DNA of 64,000 bases, taken from positions 8,742,001 through 8,806,000 of the forward strand of contig NC_135261.1 in the NCBI RefSeq assembly GCF_964204865.1, written 5' to 3'. The position numbers and the translations under genes are program-made. The notes under the pieces were generated by a model. That model was not told where the DNA came from. It was given only the letters and a program-made list of their open reading frames with translations, and ran no database searches. The stretch is from Styela clava (lineage: Eukaryota). Below are positions 52,045 to 64,000 of the stretch, in pieces (position 1 is the first letter of the stretch; every line of letters starts with the position of its first letter).

Positions 52045-53331
52045 ATGAATATCAACTATAATAGTCAAGCAATGAATGGCACACACTGTAAACAATTGAC
52101 CAACGGTACCTCGTCTACTGCTCGGGATGTTGGATTCAACACTGAGTTGGCTGTAGAGAACCTCCGAAAATACCTTAGAATTAAAACGGATCATCCAGAC
52201 CCAGACTACGATAGTATAATAAATTTTCTGGACCTGTATGGGAAGGAATTACAGCTGGAGGTAAAGCATGTTCAAATAATGGAGAACCGAAAAGTGGTTG
52301 TAATGACACTATTTGGACGAAATCCCGACCTACCATCAGTTCTATTGAATTCCCACGTCGATGTTGGATCTGCAGTTTTGCAAAACTGGGCCCGTGATCC
52401 ATGGTCCGCTTATAAAGATGAAAAGGGCAACATATACGGAATGGGAATTCAAGACATGAAAAGCGTCAGTATCCAATACTTAGAAGCTGTTCGCGTGTTA
52501 AAAATATTACGTAATACCAGCTTCGAGCGGACTGTGCACTTGTCATTTGTACCGGACGAACAAATAAACAATGGGACTCTTGGTATGGCATTGTTCGTGC
52601 ACACTCCAGAATTTAAAGCAATGAATGTCGGTGTAGTAATAGACGAAGGATTAGCATGTCCCGATAATAAATATTATGTTTTCTACGGAGAAAGAAGTCC
52701 GTGGTGGGTTCATGTTAAATGTCGTGGTAATGCCGGGCATGCAGCCATGTTTATTGATGACACAGCTTGCGATAAGGTGCAAAAAGTCATTAAATCTTTC
52801 ACGGATTACCGCAACAAGGAGCAAAAACGGTTCAAAGGTAATCATTGTCAACGTTTGGGTGACTTTACTACTATAAATGTGACTGGCATTCATGGTGGAG
52901 TTCATTCAAACGCTGTACCCGACGAATTCACGGCTGCTTTTGATATTCGAATCCCGCCAACAGTCAATTTACATAAATTTGAAGAAAAAATTAAAACATG
53001 GTGCCACGAGGCGGGAGATGACGTAACATATGAATTTTTGAACAAGAATACAAACCAAAAAACAACCCCTACCGATAGCCTGTGGTGGAAGACGTTTGTA
53101 ACTACTCTTCGACAAAGAAACGTGGAGGTTTTACAAGAAATTTTCTGTGCATTCTCTGATGGGCGTTTTCTACGAGAAGCCGGATATCAAGTGATCGGTT
53201 TTAGTCCAATGCGAAACACAACCATGGTGATGTACGAAAGAGATGAATATCTTAACGAAAAAATATTTCTGGAGGGAATCGATGTTTATTGTGACTTGAT
53301 ACCTGCCTTGGCGAACTTGACATTTCAATAG
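52045..53331 (+). CDS. ACY1: Aminoacylase-1-like M20A metallopeptidase-family protein, intronless, 428 aa, with altered second metal site
   Basis: Single uninterrupted ORF. Motifs YLRIKTDHPDPDY, PSVLLNSHVDV, GNIYGMGIQDMKSVSIQYLEA, RTVHLSFVPDEQ, DEGLACP, VFYGERSPWW, GNAGHA, TTINVT..GGV..NAVP, FDIRIPP and GFSPMRNT are diagnostic of eukaryotic ACY1. Confidence 0.9.
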   Translation: MNINYNSQAMNGTHCKQLTNGTSSTARDVGFNTELAVENLRKYLRIKTDHPDPDYDSIINFLDLYGKELQLEVKHVQIMENRKVVVMTLFGRNPDLPSVLLNSHVDVGSAVLQNWARDPWSAYKDEKGNIYGMGIQDMKSVSIQYLEAVRVLKILRNTSFERTVHLSFVPDEQINNGTLGMALFVHTPEFKAMNVGVVIDEGLACPDNKYYVFYGERSPWWVHVKCRGNAGHAAMFIDDTACDKVQKVIKSFTDYRNKEQKRFKGNHCQRLGDFTTINVTGIHGGVHSNAVPDEFTAAFDIRIPPTVNLHKFEEKIKTWCHEAGDDVTYEFLNKNTNQKTTPTDSLWWKTFVTTLRQRNVEVLQEIFCAFSDGRFLREAGYQVIGFSPMRNTTMVMYERDEYLNEKIFLEGIDVYCDLIPALANLTFQ

Positions 53332-54710: not shown

Positions 54711-55438
54711 GTCTACACTCTACAACAGGGACATTTCTGACGGTTGGTTCTAACCCTGCCTCTCTCTTCATTCCATTTTTTTTAACTGAATTTAAATTGA
54801 ATTTAAATTGAAAGTTCATCTGAATTATGTCTTAACATCTGCCGTAGGAAAAGCATTAATTTTGGTAATTGATCGTTTAAAATTTTTTAAACTTTTATGT
54901 TAGGTCGTAATGTCATTTTGCATCATCAAAAATATACAATAGCTAGGGTCAACCTTGCATGTAAACTTGAGATATGAACTGAAGTGAACGGTTATTCAAA
55001 TGACACTATTTAATGACGATCAGGAATCATAATCATCACTATCCCCCTTTTCTATCGACAGCAGTCAGCGTTCATGAAGTGGAATATATTACATAGTTGC
55101 TGTTTTAAGAAGCTGCAGTAATGATACAAACTTTGAAAATTTACAAACGTACAGAGTTTATTGCTAATAGTAAACGTAAAAACTTTCCAATATATTGATT
55201 GCAAACTACCCGAATTAAAAAATCAACCAAGATGATTGGCAGGCAGCAAAATGGTAGAGTGGACTGCTGAGATGTCACACAAACTCAACCTTTACACACA
55301 CTAAAAAATAACATTTGAAAACACCTGTACGCATTCATATAATTTTCTGCTATATATTGTGGAGAATTTATTTTAAGTTGATTCTTTGTCATAAAAGTTT
55401 AAGTCACTTTCTCATTTCAAAGAGCAACCATGGTTTTA

Positions 55439-58400
55439 TCAAGCTCCGTTCTCAGCTAAGTAAGAACAAACAGGATGCCAAATCTGTAATTTTGATCCCG
55501 CTCTGCAACCATACACCGACCCATGCACGATTTCGCAATTCCCTTTTCTTTCTTTTCTAACTTGTTGTCTGACGGTACATCTTGCTAATGTCAATTGATT
55601 TCCACGGGAATCAACGTTTGCAGGCATGGCTCCTGAAACCAAGATACCAAATTCTCAAAAATCAACTTAATCGAGTGGCTGCCCGTTTGGGGCCGTATTT
55701 TAAGTTATCAAAGTTCCCCATAAAAAATTATAAAATGAAAATACCATTCATTAATATAGAATGTGAGAGCATTGTACTAATATATGCCCTGTAGGCTGGC
55801 TACCTGCGGCCATAGCGGCATGATCTTTGACAATACCAGACTTCAGCATCGTTTAGCGGTAAAACAAAATATCAGAAAACGAAGGAGGTGTATAGTAAAA
55901 AGAACAAGAGAGCTATGCTCAAATATATGGACACGTAGCGCCACCCAATGGCAATAATTTTGATGACGTCATAGCGGGGAAAAAAAATAATAGCCTTCTG
56001 GAGAAAAATTTCATCTTTAACCAGTGACAATTTCAAAGCAATTGGTCCAGTATTCGAAGAGAAAAGCGATTTTTTAAAAATGGAGACGGAGACAAATAAC
56101 AATAACAACAAGAGAGCTACGCACAAATATATGGACACGTTAGACCAGAGCGAATCAGTCTTTACCAGTACCTTTGACGCTACCGGTACCCTCAAAAAAG
56201 TTCTGAATTTCCAGTAGCAAGAATTTTGCAGAATCAAAACGTACAGCCAGTCATGACACTGACTAAAATCCGTGTTCCCATGGATAAAAAATAATACAGC
56301 AAAATTTTGGACGAAATATCAAATTTCATAGAATTCACGCAAAATTTTGAAATAAATAAAAGTAATAGCCTTCTAGCGAAGAAATTAATCTTTAACCACT
56401 GAAAATTTCAAAGCAATTGGTCCAGTATTCGAAGAGAAAAGCGATTTTTTAAAAACGTGTCAAAGAACAAGAACAACAACAACAACAACATAATATTGAA
56501 ACGATCGTTATGGCCACTAAACGTGTCCAATAACAAGAGAGCTATGCTCAAATATGTGGACACGTAGCGCCACCCAGTGGCAATAATTGTAATGACGTCA
56601 TAGCAACAACAAAAAAGTAATAGCCTTCTGGAGAAAAATTTTATCTTTAACCACTGAAAATATCAAAGCAATTGGTCCAGTATTCGAAGAGAAAAGCGAT
56701 TTTTTTAAAATGGAGACGGAGACAAATAACAATAACAACAAGAGAGCTATGCTCAAATATATGGACACGTAGCGCCACCCAGTGGCAATAATTTTGATGA
56801 CGTCATAGCGAAAAAAAAAAATAACAACAAAATTTTGAAACGATCGTTATGGCCACTAAACGTGTCCAATAACAACAAAATTTTGAAACGATCGTTATGG
56901 CCACTAAACGTGTCCAACAACAAAATTTTAAAACGATCGTTATGTCCATTTCGTGTCCAATAACATGAAGTATGGATTTCGGTAGAATATGGGAAGACGC
57001 TCAACGTGGGGATGTACAAAAATCAAAGGTCACTGTACTCACCCATCTTCGCCTTCTTTCTTGCTGCTATTCTATCCAGATAAGTTACGTCTTCATATCG
57101 ATGTAGCTTTAACCTTGAACTAAATATTGTATGCCCACATTCTCGATGTCGTGGCCACATTGTCGTGGATTCGTGGTACCTAGGTTTAACGGAAATTGCC
57201 GATGATATTCAGCATTGTATAAATTCAGAATGAAAGATTTGTATCATTTTCACTGGAATAGAAGTTTTTGATCCCATTATGCGTATTACACAAACAAACA
57301 AATTGCCTAATAATTAGAGCAAGATATTGTGGAAGCTAAACTTACCATTTCATAACCTAGGCGTGTTATCTCAAATTTACTTTATCTAAAAGTGCATAGT
57401 ATACATTGTGTATTCACACAGAATGGAGCAAGTTATACAATATTCACTGTGGGCAACATCGCTACGAGAGCATTGGAAATGATAGAAGGACGCCTAGTAT
57501 ACATAGGAAGTGCAACCCCTCAGGAGTTCTCTGCTTAAGCACGTTACATTAATTGGACACGAAATTGCCAAATGGATCATATTTGCTAAAACTATTGTTG
57601 TTAGTCTCGTTGTTGGGGTTAGGGAAATTTTGTGGTGTTTTTCTCCGTAACCAATCGATTTCAACTTTTGGCTAAAGGGCTCAATATCCCACCCAGAATT
57701 TTGCCAATTTCCAGAAACTGCGCCACCACGTGTCATTCAATAATCCTAGTCCACCGGTACGATGGCAAAATTGATTTATACTCAGGGTTGTCCAAAACGA
57801 ATCGAATATTCGAATGTATTCGAATATCAAGGTATTCGAATACCTTTTCGGCTGATTTTCGAATAATTCCGAATAGTAGCCTTTTTTCGCCGTAAACGTG
57901 GTGTTTCGTTTTTTTTTTTTTTCGGGAAGCTTTAAACGACTTTTTAAATCGGCACTTTGAATGTTTATATTCTGTGCGACCGTACGTCGCATAGTGTTGC
58001 GACACATTTGCACGTTTGCGTGGGTGGACATTGCCGACATTCGTGTACGAGGCTTTTAATTTACAAATTCATTTCCATTACGTCGAAAAATTGAGAAAGT
58101 ATGTTTCTTTTATTTCTATGTGGCCTGCTTATTATTCGCATGAGTCTTCTCAAGCATGATTTGTGTAACCTTATATTTGGGTCTTAGGGTCTGCCAATCA
58201 TAATATTTAATCGCAGGATGGTTATCGTTACTTTAAAGAGGAACACGGCCACCAAGATAAAGTGATTTGTGACCCCTTCGTTTTGCCGATTCAGCAAAAC
58301 ACGACAGGGGTAGGAAAACACAGCTGTGAAATAACCCGTGGACGTACAGTGTAGTACTTATCACATTCCAAAATTATTTCAACATTCGGGTTAATAGGTT

Positions 58401-61400
58401 GTCCAAAATGATTGCCGCTTTACAACTTAAATTTACCGCTCAATTGTTAAAAATAGTTAATTCTGTGAGTATGATTCTACCAAACTAACATGATCTGGTT
58501 CTAAACATATAAAATTATTAGCGAATTTTTCTACCCGTCTTATTGGAGGCCTTTATGGAAAAAAACCTTTTTTGAGTGCTAAAAATAGACATCGTCCTAC
58601 TTGCCATGTGGACTTATTAGCCGGGAAATACGGTATTTATAGCCGTAATTGTTACGATATCCAATAAATTGTCACAAGTTGGAAAAACAAGTCGATTTAT
58701 TAGAAAATAATTTCTGGCAAATAATTCTGATAACGATAGTTAAAAGTATCGATCCTTTCCAGGATGATTTTTTGTTGCGCAAAATAATCCAATCCATGAC
58801 TGGTACCAGCATTTAAAATGTCATGCCGTATTAATTTAATTCTGTTCAACGTAACTCATGGTTGTATCGACAATCTGTGGACATAAAATGTGTAGTAAAC
58901 TGACCGATATTATTAAATATTGATTCTTATTTTTATATTGATAAAATAATGAAAGTATTAATGCCAAATACAACGGGTATTTGTGGACATGAAATACGTG
59001 GTAAACTGCCCAATTATAATTAATTTCGGACTCGTGTTTACAAAATAATAAAACTAATAATTCTAAAATGCAACGGCGATCTGTGGCCTTCAAATGTGTG
59101 GTAAACTGCCCGATTTACCGATTTATCGGTCATGGATTTGAATATTTTGCGCAGCACAAAATCATCCTAGTAAAAAGTCCATACTTTTATATACAAACCA
59201 ATGGCAACCATTATACAAATTAGTTCCCAAGAGCGGGATGAAATATAAATTGTTTTTCCGAATTTTTCGTGAGTACGAAAATAAGAATCAAAACTAATTA
59301 TATTCGGCACAATATCACGGCAATCTGTGGACATAAATAGTGTGGCAAACTCGCGATTAATATTAATTTTTGATTCCTATTTTCGTATTTACAAAATACA
59401 AGGCGATCTGTGGACTTACAATGTGTGGTAAACTACCCGATTATAAATAGTTTTTGATTCCTATTTTCATAATTATGAAATAATAAAAGTATTATTACTC
59501 AAACATACAACGGCGATCTGCGGACTTAAAATGTGTGGTAAAGTTCCCAAATATAATTAATTTTTGATTCGTATTTTTGTACTCACGAAAAAATTGTCAC
59601 AAGTCGGAAAAATACCTCATACTTTATCCCGCTTTTCGACAAATAATTTGGATAATGGTTGGTATTTAAAAGTATGGGCGTTTTACTAGGGTGATTTTGT
59701 GTTGCGCAAATATTCAAATCCATCATCGATACCACTATTGTCGTATTAATTTAATTCTGTTAACATGACTCATGGTATATAAAATATATACTGCAATAAT
59801 CTGCAAATATGAAATGCCTGGTAATATAGCTAGGTTGTAACTTGTAGATAGCAGTTATTCCATTGCTTATTGTATGGAAATTCCTTCATACATTTAGATA
59901 AGCTTCAATTAGTGGATTTTATTTTCGAAGTATTCGAAATTTCATATTCGAAAAAAATTATTTCGAATGTATTCGAAATAGTGAACTATTCGGTATTGGC
60001 CATCCCTGTATACTTTTGATATATATGAGATTTATTCAAAATTTGAATGATCAGATAACGGGTTTCTGTGTATATCGCTACTGTGTTTAGTTGACCTCCA
60101 GGTCAATTTGTGCATTGCTCCCTGCTTTTTATTGTCTTCTTTTCAACTTACCTTTTATCGAATACAGCACACATTGCCGTTTGGTCAACATATCTGCAAT
60201 AACCAGTCAGCGCTACAATTTCTCTTGATAAAATCTGGCATGACATTTCTTTCTGAAAGTATATAAAGTATTATCGGATTGTTAGTATTTGTGAAGTAAA
60301 GTTAACAATGTAGCGAGCCGGACTAATTCTTTTGCAAATGCATAGATCTGATTTTATCGGAGAAATCTAGTTCAGCCAGATACAACGATCGGTAAATCAG
60401 GTATTCTTGAAACGAGTTGTAAGTCCGTCAATGGATCTTTAAACAAATTCTGAATACGTCATTTGAATTTTTTTTCAAGGGGAATCTACGTGTTTAGTAC
60501 AATTTCCTTCCCCATTCTGAGCGCACTTTTATATGGAGAATCGAAAAACCAAATAATATTTACACATTAAAGGCACAATTGCAATATAATCTATTAATTA
60601 ATATTAAAAATAACCAAAAATATTTTTTTTAATTTTCACATCTGAAAGTACTGCTTATATATATTAAAACAATCAGCAATATGATAAATACGTGTCCAAC
60701 GAAGTATTACAAGGATTTATATCTAAATTCGGAAAATGAAATTGTTTATTGGATTAATTTTTAATTAAGCCAACGAAACTTCATGAATCATATATTATCA
60801 ATATAAACAAGTCTTTTTAAGCCTATTGTAGAAGAGATTATTTCTAGAAATACATTTGAGGAAAATCAACTAGCATTTTCTAGAGCGAAACGTATTTCTC
60901 TTAAATTACTATAAACGTAAATATAGTTGTTACAGTTTAAAAAATTTCGAAGAGTAGATTTGATTCTGTATTGGACAGATCTTCTTATCTTACGCTGTGA
61001 TTGACATCATAAAATTTTTGATTTAAACAGGCGTTTTGTATATACATGTTTGTGTATAGTTTGATGTTGTATATAAAATTCTGTGTATGTAATGTTGTAA
61101 TCCGATTTAATTATAGATTAAACACTAAATTTTTTGACATGTTATAGTTTGTATAATGGAACTTATAATGGAAATTATTAAAGCCTTAGCTAATTTTTTT
61201 TCCTGTTTTGTAAATCAATTTTATTCAAAACGTGGATTGCCGATCCGCGGATTACATTTTTTGTATTTTTCATAAAACAATGGTTGTTTGTTACGTATAG
61301 GATTGATATAATCGTTTCTATAATATTGAGCCCATCTGGATTTTTTTATTGAAGTTATTTATTAAGTTCACTGAAGATAGCGCCTGTATACATTATGAGC

Positions 61401-62533
61401 TGTAGGTACACTACTTTGTTGCTCAAATTTCTAGAGTGCGGATTCGAAAAACAATGTTAAGAGAAATTTATGAAAAATATCACTACACACCGCCATTTTG
61501 CGATGAGGTTATTCATAAATGTGAGGCATCGTTTATTTTCTATATAATACCAACCACTGAATGTTGATAACAAACCATCATTACCAATATAATCTTGTAA
61601 TGTGTGACGAATGCGGTGTTCCTAAGAGAATTTATATAGGTAGAAACAACCATTTTACGCGTTTTTGTGACATTGGCGGTTTCACTGGAAATAATAAGTG
61701 GCACAATGTGACTCAGATATTCACAGAATTCAGTGGTTCTTAACCTTTTCCACACACGCCATTGTTCTAAGAACGAAGCCAGATGGACTTTCAAAAACGT
61801 TGCGAATGTGAGTTTGAATCACGAAAATCCACTTAAAATCCGGCGATTAAGGATTATAGAAGTGTTATTTCGAATTTGTTTTTGTGGCTATTGTAAGCGT
61901 TGTTTTCTCTGCTAGAAAGTCATCGAAATATTTGAACAAACGAAACTATATAAACGTTTTTAAAGTCTTAATGCTTGGAATCGTGCATTTTCTTGTGTGT
62001 CAGTCATTCGCTCCAAACTAAAATCTAGAGCCTAGCCGAGTATATTTGAGTACTTTGGACATGGTTTCCTACCATAACAAGGAAATCACCTCAAATTTAG
62101 TATCATTCGGACCCAATATGATTGAAATTCCGATTCCGGAACTTTGTGAATTGTAAAATGCCGTCTCCATAGATGGCATAGACGACACAGTTCAAAATTT
62201 TACAGCTCAAGTCAGTTTAAAAATACGATTCTCAACCCCCGAGTGAACAAAACTTTTTAGCATCACGTTGTGTTGTTTAACCTCGCTCTCTGAAATACAA
62301 ACACTTACCTTGCGTTGCGGGCAACCACCCCTTCTTTCGACTTGGTGCCGTTGACGTTGTCGCAGTGCGTTCCAACTGGTCTGATTATAAAACATGCTCA
62401 AACTTTCGGGTATTTCCTCGGGCATTAAACATTCAATATTAGCTTTAGAAGGTACTCCACCGGTAGTTTTCCCAAGCTTCATAAAACTTAGTATAATCAA
62501 CACAAACGCCGTGTGTAATTTGTGTATAATCAT
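55439..62533 (-). CDS. Orphan secreted cysteine-rich prepro-protein, 4 exons, 218 aa (possible degenerate cystine-knot ligand)
   Basis: Minus-strand exons 62533-62309 (225 nt), 60252-60152 (101), 57179-57043 (137), 55632-55439 (194). Donors GTAAGT/GTAAGT/GTGAGT, AG acceptors, phases 0/2/1 all consistent, giving a 657-nt open frame ending TGA. Hydrophobic N-terminus, basic RQRQR...ERR stretch, then 9 Cys. Confidence 0.78.
55903..56961. mobile_element. Head-to-tail array of Helentron/DINE-1-like (HINE) elements
   Basis: Unit head AACAAGAGAGCTA(T/C)GC.CAAATAT.TGGACACG at 55903, 56107, 56532 and 56737; unit tail GAAACGATCGTTATG.CCA.T..CGTGTCCAA at ~56500-56530 and three times in 56822-56961; subterminal inverted TGGACACG/CGTGTCCA. 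Confidence 0.72.
57783..60008. mobile_element. hAT-like composite non-autonomous element with 6-bp TSD
   Basis: CAGGGTTGTCCAA ... TTGGCCATCCCTG flanked by TATACT on both sides; TATTCGAATA subterminal repeats at both ends; internal nested repeats. Confidence 0.75.
58868..59570. repeat. Minisatellite-like array (~80-110 bp unit, ~6 copies) inside the 57783-60008 element
   Basis: Unit CGGCGATCTGTGGAC.T.AAATGTGTGGTAAACT.CCC.AT.ATAATTAATTTTTGATTC at ~58868, 58972, 59073, 59317, 59400 and 59510. Confidence 0.8.
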
Positions 62534-64000
62534 CGTTTTTCTACCTTGCTATAACAGATAAAATGTAACAGATTTTGATGATGTGATGAAGTCTATAAAT
62601 AGAATAATCAATATCTTTAGCTACTACTTAAATTCAGCCAAAGATTCAGTTGAATTGGCCGCCGTTACTTAGACTCCACAAGAACTCGTAACTGTGCTCA
62701 CTAATGTTGATTTTTATCTTTATTTCAACCATTTAGTTTAGAATGGCGGAAGAACTTTCTATATCACTTTAAGGTAAAATATTAATCTGTTCTGGCTCTG
62801 GCGACCACCATTCATTCAGTGTACACTTCATTCATTTTTATAGGTCCCCCTCGTAGATAGCAAATTATATATGTGCAGTGAGAATTTCGCTCGCTCTACA
62901 GGCAGTTTTATGTCATCGCAGGTCGGTATGAGTCAGTTCAAGTATATGGAACTATAACGAGTTTTATTATAAATCCATTCCATAACCAAGCCTATGGATG
63001 ACCGTGATTCGTGATATCATTAGGCCGCCAAATTAAATTCCTTCTCCTCTTGAATATGCATGAGAATTAAAAAATAAATAAAAATTGAAAATAAGACTGA
63101 ATTTGATTTCTCTGAGCTATAATGTTTTAAATATTTGGGAAGGCTAGCTATACCCTAATATAATAGTCAAGACTAAAAGTTGGTGTGAAAACGAGTATTA
63201 ACTGATAATAGCAAGCCTCAACATACTCAAAAAATACTAGATGTCTAAAATACCATAAAACCACGCTAAAAATATCAATATATTGAAAACGACCGGTTCT
63301 TTGCAGTTGGTTCGCCACGCAGAGCATTTGGAGAACAATTGCCATCACACCATTGATGACCCTGCGCGTGTTCCTAGGTTCCAATCTCTTCGGAAATGAT
63401 TTTAAGCAATGAGAATGCTGGGCTCGTTGCCGTTTCTCGTATGTCTAACACCGCGCTAGCTATAAGATTTGGCTATCAACTAACAGTGTAATGTTGTATA
63501 TGTTATTTGAAGGCATTTACGATTTCACCACATCGAACTACCCGTCTAACATTGCTTTTTGAACTAGATTTTCACTATACATAGCCCTCCTTACCTTATT
63601 GTCAACATCTCCAACCTGAGAAGCATTGACACGAACTTCAAAAAGCTCATGACTTCTATTATAACGGTTCGCGCATGAAGTGACTGTGTATAAGTATGAA
63701 CCTCATTTTTTCTCAAGCGATATCCGTTGTTGTCGTGTACTTCCAGCTACGTCAAACGCTATCTGTGTATATTGATGAACTTAATTTTTTCTCGGACGAT
63801 AGGCTATCCGTTGTTATCGTGTACTTTTGAATACGTCACATGTTACATGCTGTCTTTAGAAGAAGGGACATAATACGTGAATGAACTCCCTATTGAATGT
63901 CGTAGTTTACCTAGTGACTTACGTGCGATTTCTCTCATCGGTATATGTAATATTCAGAATATCTGTGATCCCAAATTGTATTAGTTTTTCATGAAATATA

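What the first reader, a model, noticed from the sequence alone, without database searches (positions are those of the whole stretch)
55439..62533. Hidden four-exon gene for an orphan secreted Cys-rich prepro-protein, possibly a degenerate cystine-knot ligand
Seen: four minus-strand exons, separated by introns largely filled with TEs, splice in perfect phase to 218 aa: MIIHKLHTAFVLIILSFMKLGKTTGGVPSKANIECLMPEEIPESLSMFYNQTSWNALRQRQRHQVERR/GGCPQRKKEMSCQILSREIVALTGYCRYVDQTAMCAVFDKRYHESTTMWPRHRECGHTIFSSRLKLHRYEDVTYLDRIAARKKAKMGAMPANVDSRGNQLTLARCTVRQQVRKERKGNCEIVHGSVYGCRAGSKLQIWHPVCSYLAENGA*. The ORF track shows only exons 1 and 4 as unrelated ORFs. The protein has a signal-peptide-like N-terminus, a short pro-region with an N-glycosylation sequon (NQT), candidate convertase sites (RQRQR, RR) and a very basic ~150-aa mature part with 9 Cys. 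Established: signal + pro-region + basic cleavage site + Cys-rich C-terminus is the architecture of cystine-knot ligands (Spaetzle/neurotrophin, PDGF/VEGF, IL-17, PTTH/Trunk), and IL-17 shows a knot can lack one disulfide. Inference: SC, REC, RC and PVC could be knot cysteines, YC-x8-C and NC-x9-C could staple two hairpin loops, and an odd Cys could dimerise. The canonical terminal CxC is absent and I cannot assign a family, so this may be an undescribed signalling or immune ligand.
Basis: partly seen in the sequence, partly recalled or inferred. Interest (0 to 1): 0.8.

Follow-up and report, generated by a model that had tools for sequence, protein, structure and literature searches.

The report
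Annotated orphan secreted protein of Styela
The four exons form a real, spliced and expressed gene of the sea squirt Styela clava for a small basic cysteine-containing secreted protein with no detectable relatives. The gene is already in RefSeq as "uncharacterized", and nothing tested here supports a cystine-knot ligand.

Summary
The four minus-strand exons (62533-62309, 60252-60152, 57179-57043, 55632-55439) have GT-AG borders.

The 218-aa product is letter for letter RefSeq XP_077974821.1, "uncharacterized protein LOC120330216 [Styela clava]". The gene is therefore hidden only from a bacterial-style ORF track, not from public annotation.

It is single-copy, with no paralogue or retrocopy in the 377-Mb genome. 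It matches nothing in Pfam, NCBIfam, PDB sequences, the 5.8-billion-protein word search, or (exon 4 only) a full HMMER scan of 1.84 billion representatives.

The cystine-knot reading is not supported:
- No two cysteines lie closer than 8 residues apart, so there is no CxC or CxGxC.
- There is no RX[K/R]R convertase site before residue 69.
- Counting Cys35, the secreted chain has 10 cysteines, so no unpaired one is implied.

The fold stays unknown: AlphaFold2 gave pLDDT 32-37 and ESMFold 0.32.

Best reading: a lineage-restricted, cationic, disulfide-bonded secreted glycoprotein of unknown function. Interest is low to moderate.

The parts
62593..62658 (-). Putative core promoter: CCAAT at 62658-62654 and the TATA-like TATTTATAG at 62601-62593. 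This would place the transcription start near 62570.
   Evidence: Read directly. The RNA contig X6 record 30 reaches 62550, 17 nt 5' of the ATG. Promoter function is inferred, not tested.
62309..62550 (-). Exon 1: at least 17 nt of 5' UTR plus codons 1-75. It encodes the signal peptide, Cys35, the NQT sequon at residues 50-52, the basic stretch RQRQRHQVERR at 57-68 and Cys71.
   Evidence: RNA contigs cover 62309-62527, 62309-62514 and 62328-62550. The donor is AAG|GTAAGT.
60253..62308 (-). Intron 1 (2056 nt, phase 0), unique sequence.
   Evidence: depth is zero in X1, X2 and X6 apart from a trace contig of depth 2.5, and single-copy-level depth in DNA run X10.
60152..60252 (-). Exon 2 (101 nt; residues 76-108 plus two bases of codon 109; Cys80, Cys94 and Cys103).
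   Evidence: There are 104 contig letters between the exon 1 and exon 3 pieces, and the bin depth equals contig depth x 104/200. Own-genome match.
57180..60151 (-). Intron 2 (2972 nt, phase 2). It holds a roughly 2.2-kb high-copy element with terminal inverted repeats at 57783-60008 (CAGGGATGGCCAA... / ...TTGGACAACCCTG).
   Evidence: for the terminal repeats. for the internal repeats. X10 depth is 2e5-7e5 against about 400-1000 for unique DNA, and an X10 contig joins 57776 to 60009, which indicates an allele without the insertion.
57043..57179 (-). Exon 3 (137 nt; residues 110-154 plus split codons; Cys123).
   Evidence: RNA contigs of three studies lie on 57042-57176. Own-genome match.
55633..57042 (-). 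Intron 3 (1410 nt, phase 1), filled with dispersed and tandem repeat units.
   Evidence: families D1, D3, D4 and D5; the 56900-57099 bin has depth 1.6e5 in X10.
55439..55632 (-). Exon 4, coding part (residues 156-218 and the TGA stop; Cys173, Cys187, Cys197 and Cys210).
   Evidence: The loose end of X1 at 57042 reverse-complements to the first letters of this exon. It is 100% identical to P0001 residues 156-218.
55045..55438 (-). Probable 3' UTR of about 390 nt, if the contig is colinear with the genome. AATAAA lies at 55162-55157.
   Evidence: Inferred from the 587 letters of X1 record 1 beyond exon 3 and the sequence.

Best explanation
This is the single-copy Styela clava gene LOC120330216. 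It is a transcribed, correctly spliced four-exon gene restricted, as far as public data show, to this tunicate lineage.

Its 218-aa product enters the secretory pathway through a short cleavable signal peptide, with cleavage most likely around residues 25-27.

I infer that the remaining chain of about 190 residues stays in one piece. It has 10 cysteines, enough for five internal disulfides; one N-glycan at Asn50; a net charge of about +15; and several clusters of basic residues (RQRQRHQVERR, QRKKE, ARKKAK, VRKERK).

It most likely works outside the cell as a disulfide-stabilised cationic protein that binds polyanionic partners. These could be sulfated glycans of the matrix or tunic, or microbial surfaces. 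That would make it a lineage-specific matrix-bound effector, defence factor or signal.

It is not a recognisable member of any cystine-knot or other known family.

Shown: the gene, its splicing and expression, the protein sequence, and the absence of detectable relatives and paralogues. Inferred: secretion, disulfide pairing, no propeptide removal, and polyanion binding.
For: - Gene and splicing. Spliced contigs come from three studies, intron 1 is silent in them, and the DNA run is unspliced.
- Identity: exon 4 retrieved P0001, a 218-aa protein, at 100% identity.
- Single copy: searches found only the four exons, with no retrocopy.
- No family: Pfam, NCBIfam and PDB sequences gave nothing at E<=10. 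The word searches returned only the protein itself. The HMMER scan of 1.84e9 representatives with exon 4 also returned only itself. The Atlas best hit scored 0.84, which is chance level.
- Signal peptide: a hydrophobic core at residues 9-18, and a helix at 2-19 that is the only part with pLDDT 72-80.
- Cysteines and charge: 10 Cys downstream of the signal peptide, pI 9.6-9.8, and no furin motif at 57-68.
- Polymorphism: all four amino-acid variants seen between haplotypes (I3T, F17C, Q51R, V65I) lie in residues 1-68. Residues 69-218 are identical in P0001, P0002 and P0003, and exon 3 shows only a synonymous change. This fits a constrained body behind a looser leader.
Against: - No SignalP or ProP run was available, so secretion rests on heuristics.
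- The disulfide pattern, glycosylation and intact-chain idea are untested.
- A dibasic RR68 could still be cut by PC1/2-type enzymes.
- The function is pure inference from charge and cysteine content. The tissue and stage of expression are unknown because the run records are coded.
- Only exon 4 had the exhaustive HMMER search. The rest of the protein had only word-index searches.
- Unannotated genomes of other stolidobranch ascidians could not be searched, so 'lineage-restricted' means 'no relative in the protein collections at hand'.
Confidence: 0.6

Rival explanations
1. One reading: a prepro-ligand. A convertase cuts after RR68 (or RQRQR61) and releases a basic chain of about 150 aa with 9 Cys. 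This chain folds as a degenerate cystine knot and dimerises through the odd cysteine, acting as a signalling or immune ligand on a receptor.
For: - The layout is signal peptide, then an N-terminal segment carrying NQT, then a basic stretch, then a basic Cys-containing body.
- All amino-acid polymorphisms fall before residue 69.
- The low-confidence models place beta-hairpins at 90-107 and 167-214, as elongated knot ligands have.
Against: - There is no RX[K/R]R or RXXR at residues 57-68.
- Cys35 in the supposed pro-region makes the whole chain even in cysteines.
- The smallest spacing between cysteines is 8, so there is no CxC, CxGxC or Cx3-4C ring element.
- No NGF, PDGF, TGF-beta, IL-17, Noggin, Spaetzle or DAN profile matched at E<=10.
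- Models with pLDDT 32-37 cannot support any fold. Foldseek gave nothing better than E 1.5 and TM 0.2.
Confidence: 0.1
2. A young or fast-drifting lineage-specific gene with little or no function. It is transcribed and spliced and perhaps translated, but the protein is not under meaningful constraint, and its 'architecture' is a chance reading.
For: - There is no relative or paralogue anywhere.
- AlphaFold2 and ESMFold find no confident fold.
- Exon 1 differs at 6 of 219 positions in X1, against about 1% in the intron pieces of the same run.
- About 10% of S. clava gene models lack any functional annotation (17,428 genes, 15,734 annotated; PMC7540406).
Against: - Four exons keep an open frame of 218 codons with consensus splice sites.
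- Spliced RNA occurs in three studies, with contig depth up to 178.
- The three public protein records are identical over residues 78-218, in a species with about 1.7% heterozygosity (PMC7540406).
- Ten cysteines and a good signal peptide are not what random sequence usually gives.
Confidence: 0.15
3. A rapidly evolving reproductive protein (gamete recognition, follicle or test cell, or seminal-type). Its divergence beyond recognition would be driven by sexual selection.
For: Only general. The protein is secreted, basic, Cys-containing, single-copy, has no detectable orthologues, and has a variable N-terminal part.
Against: There is no tissue information. The runs holding the transcript are coded and could not be tied to gonad. 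The mature part is invariant in the few haplotypes seen.
Confidence: 0.1

Closest known systems
Growth-factor cystine-knot ligands (NGF/Spaetzle/PTTH-Trunk/Noggin, PDGF/VEGF, TGF-beta, IL-17)
   Same: A signal peptide, an N-terminal segment with an N-glycan sequon, a basic Cys-containing C-terminal body of similar size, and beta-hairpins predicted at low confidence.
   Different: There is no CxC and no short CysII-CysIII spacing: the minimum gap is 8 residues. No profile matched at E<=10. There is no furin-type site, and the chain has 10 rather than 6-7 (+1) cysteines. The gene is split into four exons with no shared exon logic that I could test.
Other uncharacterised orphan secreted Cys-rich proteins of Styela clava (for example the RefSeq 'uncharacterized' ER protein in earlier scan note s1-822887)
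   Same: The same genome, a signal peptide, cysteine-containing, single-copy, no family or relative, and annotated only as uncharacterized.
   Different: There is no sequence similarity and no repeated Cys module (the internal-repeat test was negative). It has no ER-retrieval tail, so it is expected to leave the cell.
Cationic heparin-binding secreted proteins (chemokines, midkine/pleiotrophin, cationic host-defence proteins)
   Same: Works-like resemblance only: small, secreted, disulfide-bonded, pI above 9.5, with clusters of basic residues of BBXB type.
   Different: There is no homology to any of them in Pfam or PDB sequence searches. The cysteine spacings differ, and binding was not tested.

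Membership tests
Growth-factor cystine-knot superfamily | Six knot cysteines, with a ring closed by closely spaced CysII...CysIII (CxGxC, Cx3C or up to about 9 residues) and by CysV-x-CysVI (CxC). This definition is from my own knowledge of the family. | tested here: not met
   Cys lie at 35, 71, 80, 94, 103, 123, 173, 187, 197 and 210, giving gaps of 35, 8, 13, 8, 19, 49, 13, 9 and 12. There is no CxC anywhere.
Growth-factor cystine-knot superfamily | A profile match to any member family (TGF_beta, PDGF, NGF, IL17, Noggin, Spaetzle, DAN, Cys_knot and others). | tested here: not met
   hmmscan of P0001, P0002 and P0003 and of each exon against Pfam-A returned no such family at E<=10. PDB sequence searches were empty.
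Growth-factor cystine-knot superfamily | The fold: two pairs of twisted beta-strands (fingers) held by a threaded disulfide knot. | tested here: inconclusive
   AlphaFold2 without an alignment gave pLDDT 37.2 (full length) and 32.2 (residues 78-218). ESMFold gave pLDDT 0.32. The best Foldseek hit against the PDB had E 1.5 and TM at most 0.2.
Convertase-processed pro-proteins | A furin-type site, RX[K/R]R or at least RXXR, before the mature domain. | tested here: not met
   The only RXXR is RKER at 180-183, inside the Cys-rich body. Residues 57-68 offer only a dibasic RR. No ProP-type predictor was available.
Classical secretory proteins | An N-terminal signal peptide: a basic n-region, a hydrophobic core of 7-15 residues, and small residues at -3/-1. 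| tested here: met
   K5, a core AFVLIILSFM at residues 9-18, and TTGG at 23-26. A helix at 2-19 has pLDDT 72-80. This is a heuristic only; SignalP was not available.
Expressed protein-coding gene | Spliced transcripts joining all predicted exons, absent from DNA. | tested here: met
   three studies show the spliced form, DNA run X10 is unspliced, and there is no retrocopy in the genome. The exon 3-4 joint is seen only as a loose end that matches exon 4.
Taxonomically restricted (orphan) gene | No homologue outside the lineage and no paralogue inside the genome. | tested here: met
   Limits: exhaustive HMMER was run for exon 4 only, and unannotated genomes of other ascidians could not be searched.

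The most novel reading that the evidence does not exclude
The protein founds a previously undescribed disulfide-rich extracellular fold. It could be a styelid-specific ligand, cytokine-like factor or defence factor with its own receptor or target, invisible to all current sequence and structure-prediction methods.
Probability: 0.12. Interest if true: 0.55.

Novelty: already known. Interest (0 to 1): 0.25.

Why it matters
For the scan, this case shows that a reader can reconstruct a correct multi-exon gene from raw tunicate sequence. It also shows that the gene was already in RefSeq.

Biologically, it adds one more documented case of a well-expressed, single-copy secreted orphan in a tunicate. 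Such genes are candidates for lineage-specific extracellular biology (tunic, immunity, reproduction, settlement) in an invasive fouling species. Without orthologues, a fold or an expression pattern, nothing about chordate ligand evolution can be drawn from it.

Tried and rejected
- **Family scans of each exon.** Pfam and NCBIfam found nothing apart from a chance 12-bit hit.
- **PDB sequence search.** Exon 4 and P0001 gave nothing meaningful.
- **Word search with the exon-1 ORF.** It was empty. The length filter could not have reached the 218-aa record.
- **Full-length and region 69-218 word searches with the database record P0001.** Both returned only the protein itself.
- **Protein Atlas.** P0003 gave chance-level feature hits (0.84, viral fusion glycoprotein; 0.78, hemagglutinin) and structure hits with TM at most 0.27. 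I rejected the viral-glycoprotein lead, since Pfam shows no such domain.
- **Two AlphaFold2 runs without an alignment.** Both were unusable. The Foldseek search on the second gave only noise. I did not run the VIA-align searches on such models.
- **Internal-repeat test.** The score was 21, against a shuffle mean of 23.
- **Bacterial promoter/terminator scan.** It is irrelevant for a eukaryote.
- **Literature.** No paper mentions LOC120330216, and no relevant Styela Cys-rich secreted protein turned up.
- **Joined spliced protein.** I never typed or submitted it. All full-length work used the database record that the exon 4 search returned.
Full report
**1. What is in the sequence**

On the minus strand of 55439-62533 there are four open segments with consensus splice signals.
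- Exon 1 runs 62533-62309. It begins with ATG and is followed by the donor AAG|GTAAGT.
- Exon 2 runs 60252-60152. Its acceptor is tttcag|, a TACTAAC motif lies about 30 nt upstream, and its donor is AAG|GTAAGT.
- Exon 3 runs 57179-57043. Its acceptor is cctag| and its donor is TGG|GTGAGT.
- Exon 4 runs 55632-55439. Its acceptor is tttcag| and it ends with TGA.

The lengths 225+101+137+194 add to 657 nt, which is 218 codons plus the stop, with intron phases 0, 2 and 1.

I never typed or submitted a joined sequence.

**2. Is it a gene?**

Yes. One run search gave nine runs guessed to be RNA, from three studies, and four DNA-like runs. I laid X1, X2 and X6 (one per RNA-type study) and X10 (DNA) on window 56900-62899, the 6,000 letters allowed.

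*The spliced form.*
- In each RNA-type run one contig lies on exon 1 (62309-62527 in X1) and on exon 3 (57042-57176).
- Exactly 104 contig letters lie between these two pieces. These are the 101 letters of exon 2 plus a 3-letter GTA that fits either side of the joint.
- The depth of bin 60100-60299 equals contig depth x 104/200: 92.7 for 178.2 in X1, and 12.4 for 23.8 in X2.
- The X1 contig carries 587 further letters beyond 57042. The first 30 of these, reverse-complemented, are the start of exon 4.

*RNA rather than DNA.*
- Unique intron 1 has zero depth in X1, X2 and X6, apart from a trace contig of depth 2.5. That is what a little pre-mRNA would give.
- DNA run X10 covers intron 1 evenly.
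- X10 contigs run unspliced across the exon borders (records 8, 10 and 14).
- The genome holds no retrocopy.

Two are seen as contig joints and the third as a matching loose end.

*The 5' end.* The X6 contig reaches 62550, 17 nt upstream of the ATG. A CCAAT box (62658-62654) and a TATA-like TATTTATAG (62601-62593) sit where a promoter would be.

**3. Identity**

The window is contig C16:8742001-8806000 of a 377-Mb genome.

The exhaustive HMMER scan of 1.84 billion representatives with exon 4 found a single protein. This is P0001, 218 aa, 100% identical over its residues 156-218.
- It is RefSeq XP_077974821.1, 'uncharacterized protein LOC120330216 [Styela clava]'.
- Its cluster also holds XP_039253014.1, which has the same length and differs only by I3T and F17C.
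- It also holds XP_039253016.1, a 141-aa model equal to residues 78-218 and filed as LOC120330217.

The organism is therefore a tunicate. The gene is hidden only from a prokaryote-style ORF list, because public annotation has exactly this model.

**4. Relatives**

I found none.
- Pfam-A and NCBIfam on every exon and on the full-length records gave nothing at E<=10.
- PDB sequence searches gave nothing.
- The word-index search of 5.8 billion proteins returned only the protein itself. This held for the full length, for residues 69-218, and for the exon-1 ORF.
- The own genome, searched in six frames with P0001 at E<=10, returned only the four exons.
- The protein Atlas holds the P0003 sequence with an ESMFold pLDDT of 0.32. 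Its best feature hits (0.84 and 0.78, both viral glycoproteins) are in the range that shuffled proteins reach a third of the time.

There are two limits. Only exon 4 had the exhaustive scan. Genomes of other ascidians that lack protein annotation could not be searched with these tools.

**5. Anatomy of the protein**

- *Leader.* Residues 1-26 look like a cleavable signal peptide. There is K5, a hydrophobic core AFVLIILSFM at 9-18, then KLGKTTGG. The core is too short for a membrane anchor. It is the only element AlphaFold2 models with some confidence (helix 2-19, pLDDT 72-80).
- *Cysteines.* After the leader there are ten: 35, 71, 80, 94, 103, 123, 173, 187, 197 and 210.
- *Other features.* There is one sequon (N50-Q-T). 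The pI is 9.6-9.8, and there are several basic clusters at 57-68, 73-76, 148-152 and 175-184.
- *No internal repeat.* The test scored 21 against a shuffle mean of 23.

- The basic stretch RQRQRHQVERR contains no RX[K/R]R or RXXR. The only RXXR lies inside the body, at 180-183. Processing is therefore possible at a plain dibasic site, but the sequence does not indicate it.
- The 'odd' ninth cysteine exists only if residues 27-68 are removed. With Cys35 the chain has an even ten, which is most simply read as five internal disulfides in an unprocessed chain.
- The closest pair of cysteines is separated by 8 residues. Every growth-factor cystine knot that I know closes its ring with a CxC on the last strand and a short CysII-CysIII spacing. 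This includes IL-17, which lacks one disulfide. This statement rests on my own knowledge of those families.

The defining sequence feature is therefore absent, not merely degenerate.

**6. Fold**

Without homologues no alignment can be built.
- AlphaFold2 on the single sequence gave mean pLDDT 37.2 and pTM 0.20 for the full length.
- For residues 78-218 it gave mean pLDDT 32.2 and pTM 0.20.
- Both models draw beta-hairpins around 90-107 and 167-214, and one adds a helix at about 141-153. At this confidence that is not evidence.
- Foldseek against the PDB gave nothing better than E 1.5 and TM 0.2.

**7. Variation**

S. clava is about 1.7% heterozygous (PMC7540406).

| Type | Changes seen between the window, the RNA contigs and the RefSeq records |
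|---|---|
| Amino-acid | I3T, F17C, Q51R (keeps the sequon) and V65I, all in residues 1-68 |
| Synonymous | T24, E39, L45 and a Tyr codon in exon 3 |

Residues 78-218 are identical in all three public protein records. This fits a constrained body behind a loosely constrained leader and N-terminal segment. The sample is very small, and exon 4 was outside the laid stretch.

**8. What it most likely is**

It is a real, expressed, single-copy, lineage-restricted gene for a cationic, disulfide-bonded secreted glycoprotein of about 22 kDa.

I commit, at modest confidence, to an extracellular binding role toward polyanions, meaning sulfated glycans of the matrix or tunic, or microbial surfaces. This rests only on charge, basic clusters and cysteine content.

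The rivals are:
- a young gene of little function (about 0.15);
- a fast-evolving reproductive protein (about 0.1).

**9. Surroundings**

- *Downstream neighbour.* An intronless ORF for an M20/ACY1-type peptidase lies downstream in convergent orientation (52045-53331, +).
- *Upstream.* No sizeable ORF lies upstream, to the end of the window.
- *Repeats.* Introns 2 and 3 are dominated by high-copy repeats, with X10 depth 100-1000 times the unique level.
- *Intron 2 element.* Intron 2 holds an element of about 2.2 kb with terminal inverted repeats (57783-60008). An empty-site allele of it appears in the DNA run, as a joint from 57776 to 60009.

**10. Novelty and score**

- The gene model is already public, but nothing is known about the protein.
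- Orphan secreted proteins are common in this genome. About 10% of its gene models lack functional annotation (PMC7540406), and the scan has met other Styela orphans.
- The attractive part of the finding, a new cystine-knot-like ligand, fails the sequence tests that could be run and remains structurally untested.
- Interest is 0.25.

**11. Tool notes**

- The Atlas could not read P0001.

Noticed in passing
window 57783-60008 (intron 2): A high-copy element of about 2.2 kb with terminal inverted repeats CAGGGATGGCCAA... / ...TTGGACAACCCTG, flanked by AGTATA on both sides. A contig of DNA run X10 joins 57776 to 60009 (skipping 2232 nt, with 6 shared letters), so an allele without the insertion seems to segregate. 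RNA-type runs also carry many contigs of this repeat family.
   Followed up: partly
window 52045-53331 (+): An intronless 428-aa ORF with Peptidase_M20 and M20_dimer domains (ACY1-like), convergent with the gene studied here. An earlier scan note (s1-815984) says it has lost the ligands of the second zinc site. I confirmed only the family.
   Followed up: partly
window 62534-62560 (-): An acceptor-like ...ctgttatag|caaggtag| lies 15 nt upstream of the ATG. The X6 contig stops matching at 62550 with 3 unaligned letters. This could be a spliced-leader trans-splice acceptor, which is common in tunicates, rather than a plain 5' UTR. Contigs cannot decide.
   Followed up: no
window 62309-62527 (exon 1): The X1 contig differs from the window at 6 of 219 positions in exon 1. 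That compares with 1 of 135 in exon 3 and about 1% in intron pieces of the same run. The leader and N-terminal segment looks unusually polymorphic (I3T, F17C, Q51R, V65I among haplotypes).
   Followed up: partly
RefSeq records (no window coordinates): XP_039253016.1 (141 aa, LOC120330217) equals residues 78-218 of LOC120330216. The present genome holds only one copy, so the second locus id probably reflects a split or duplicated model in an older assembly.
   Followed up: partly
window 55881-56950 (intron 3): Nested direct repeats: 160-nt and 110-nt units in three copies each, and a 33-66-nt unit containing GAAACGATCGTTATGGCCA in four copies. The depth in the DNA run is very high, so this is a dispersed repeat family.
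   Followed up: no
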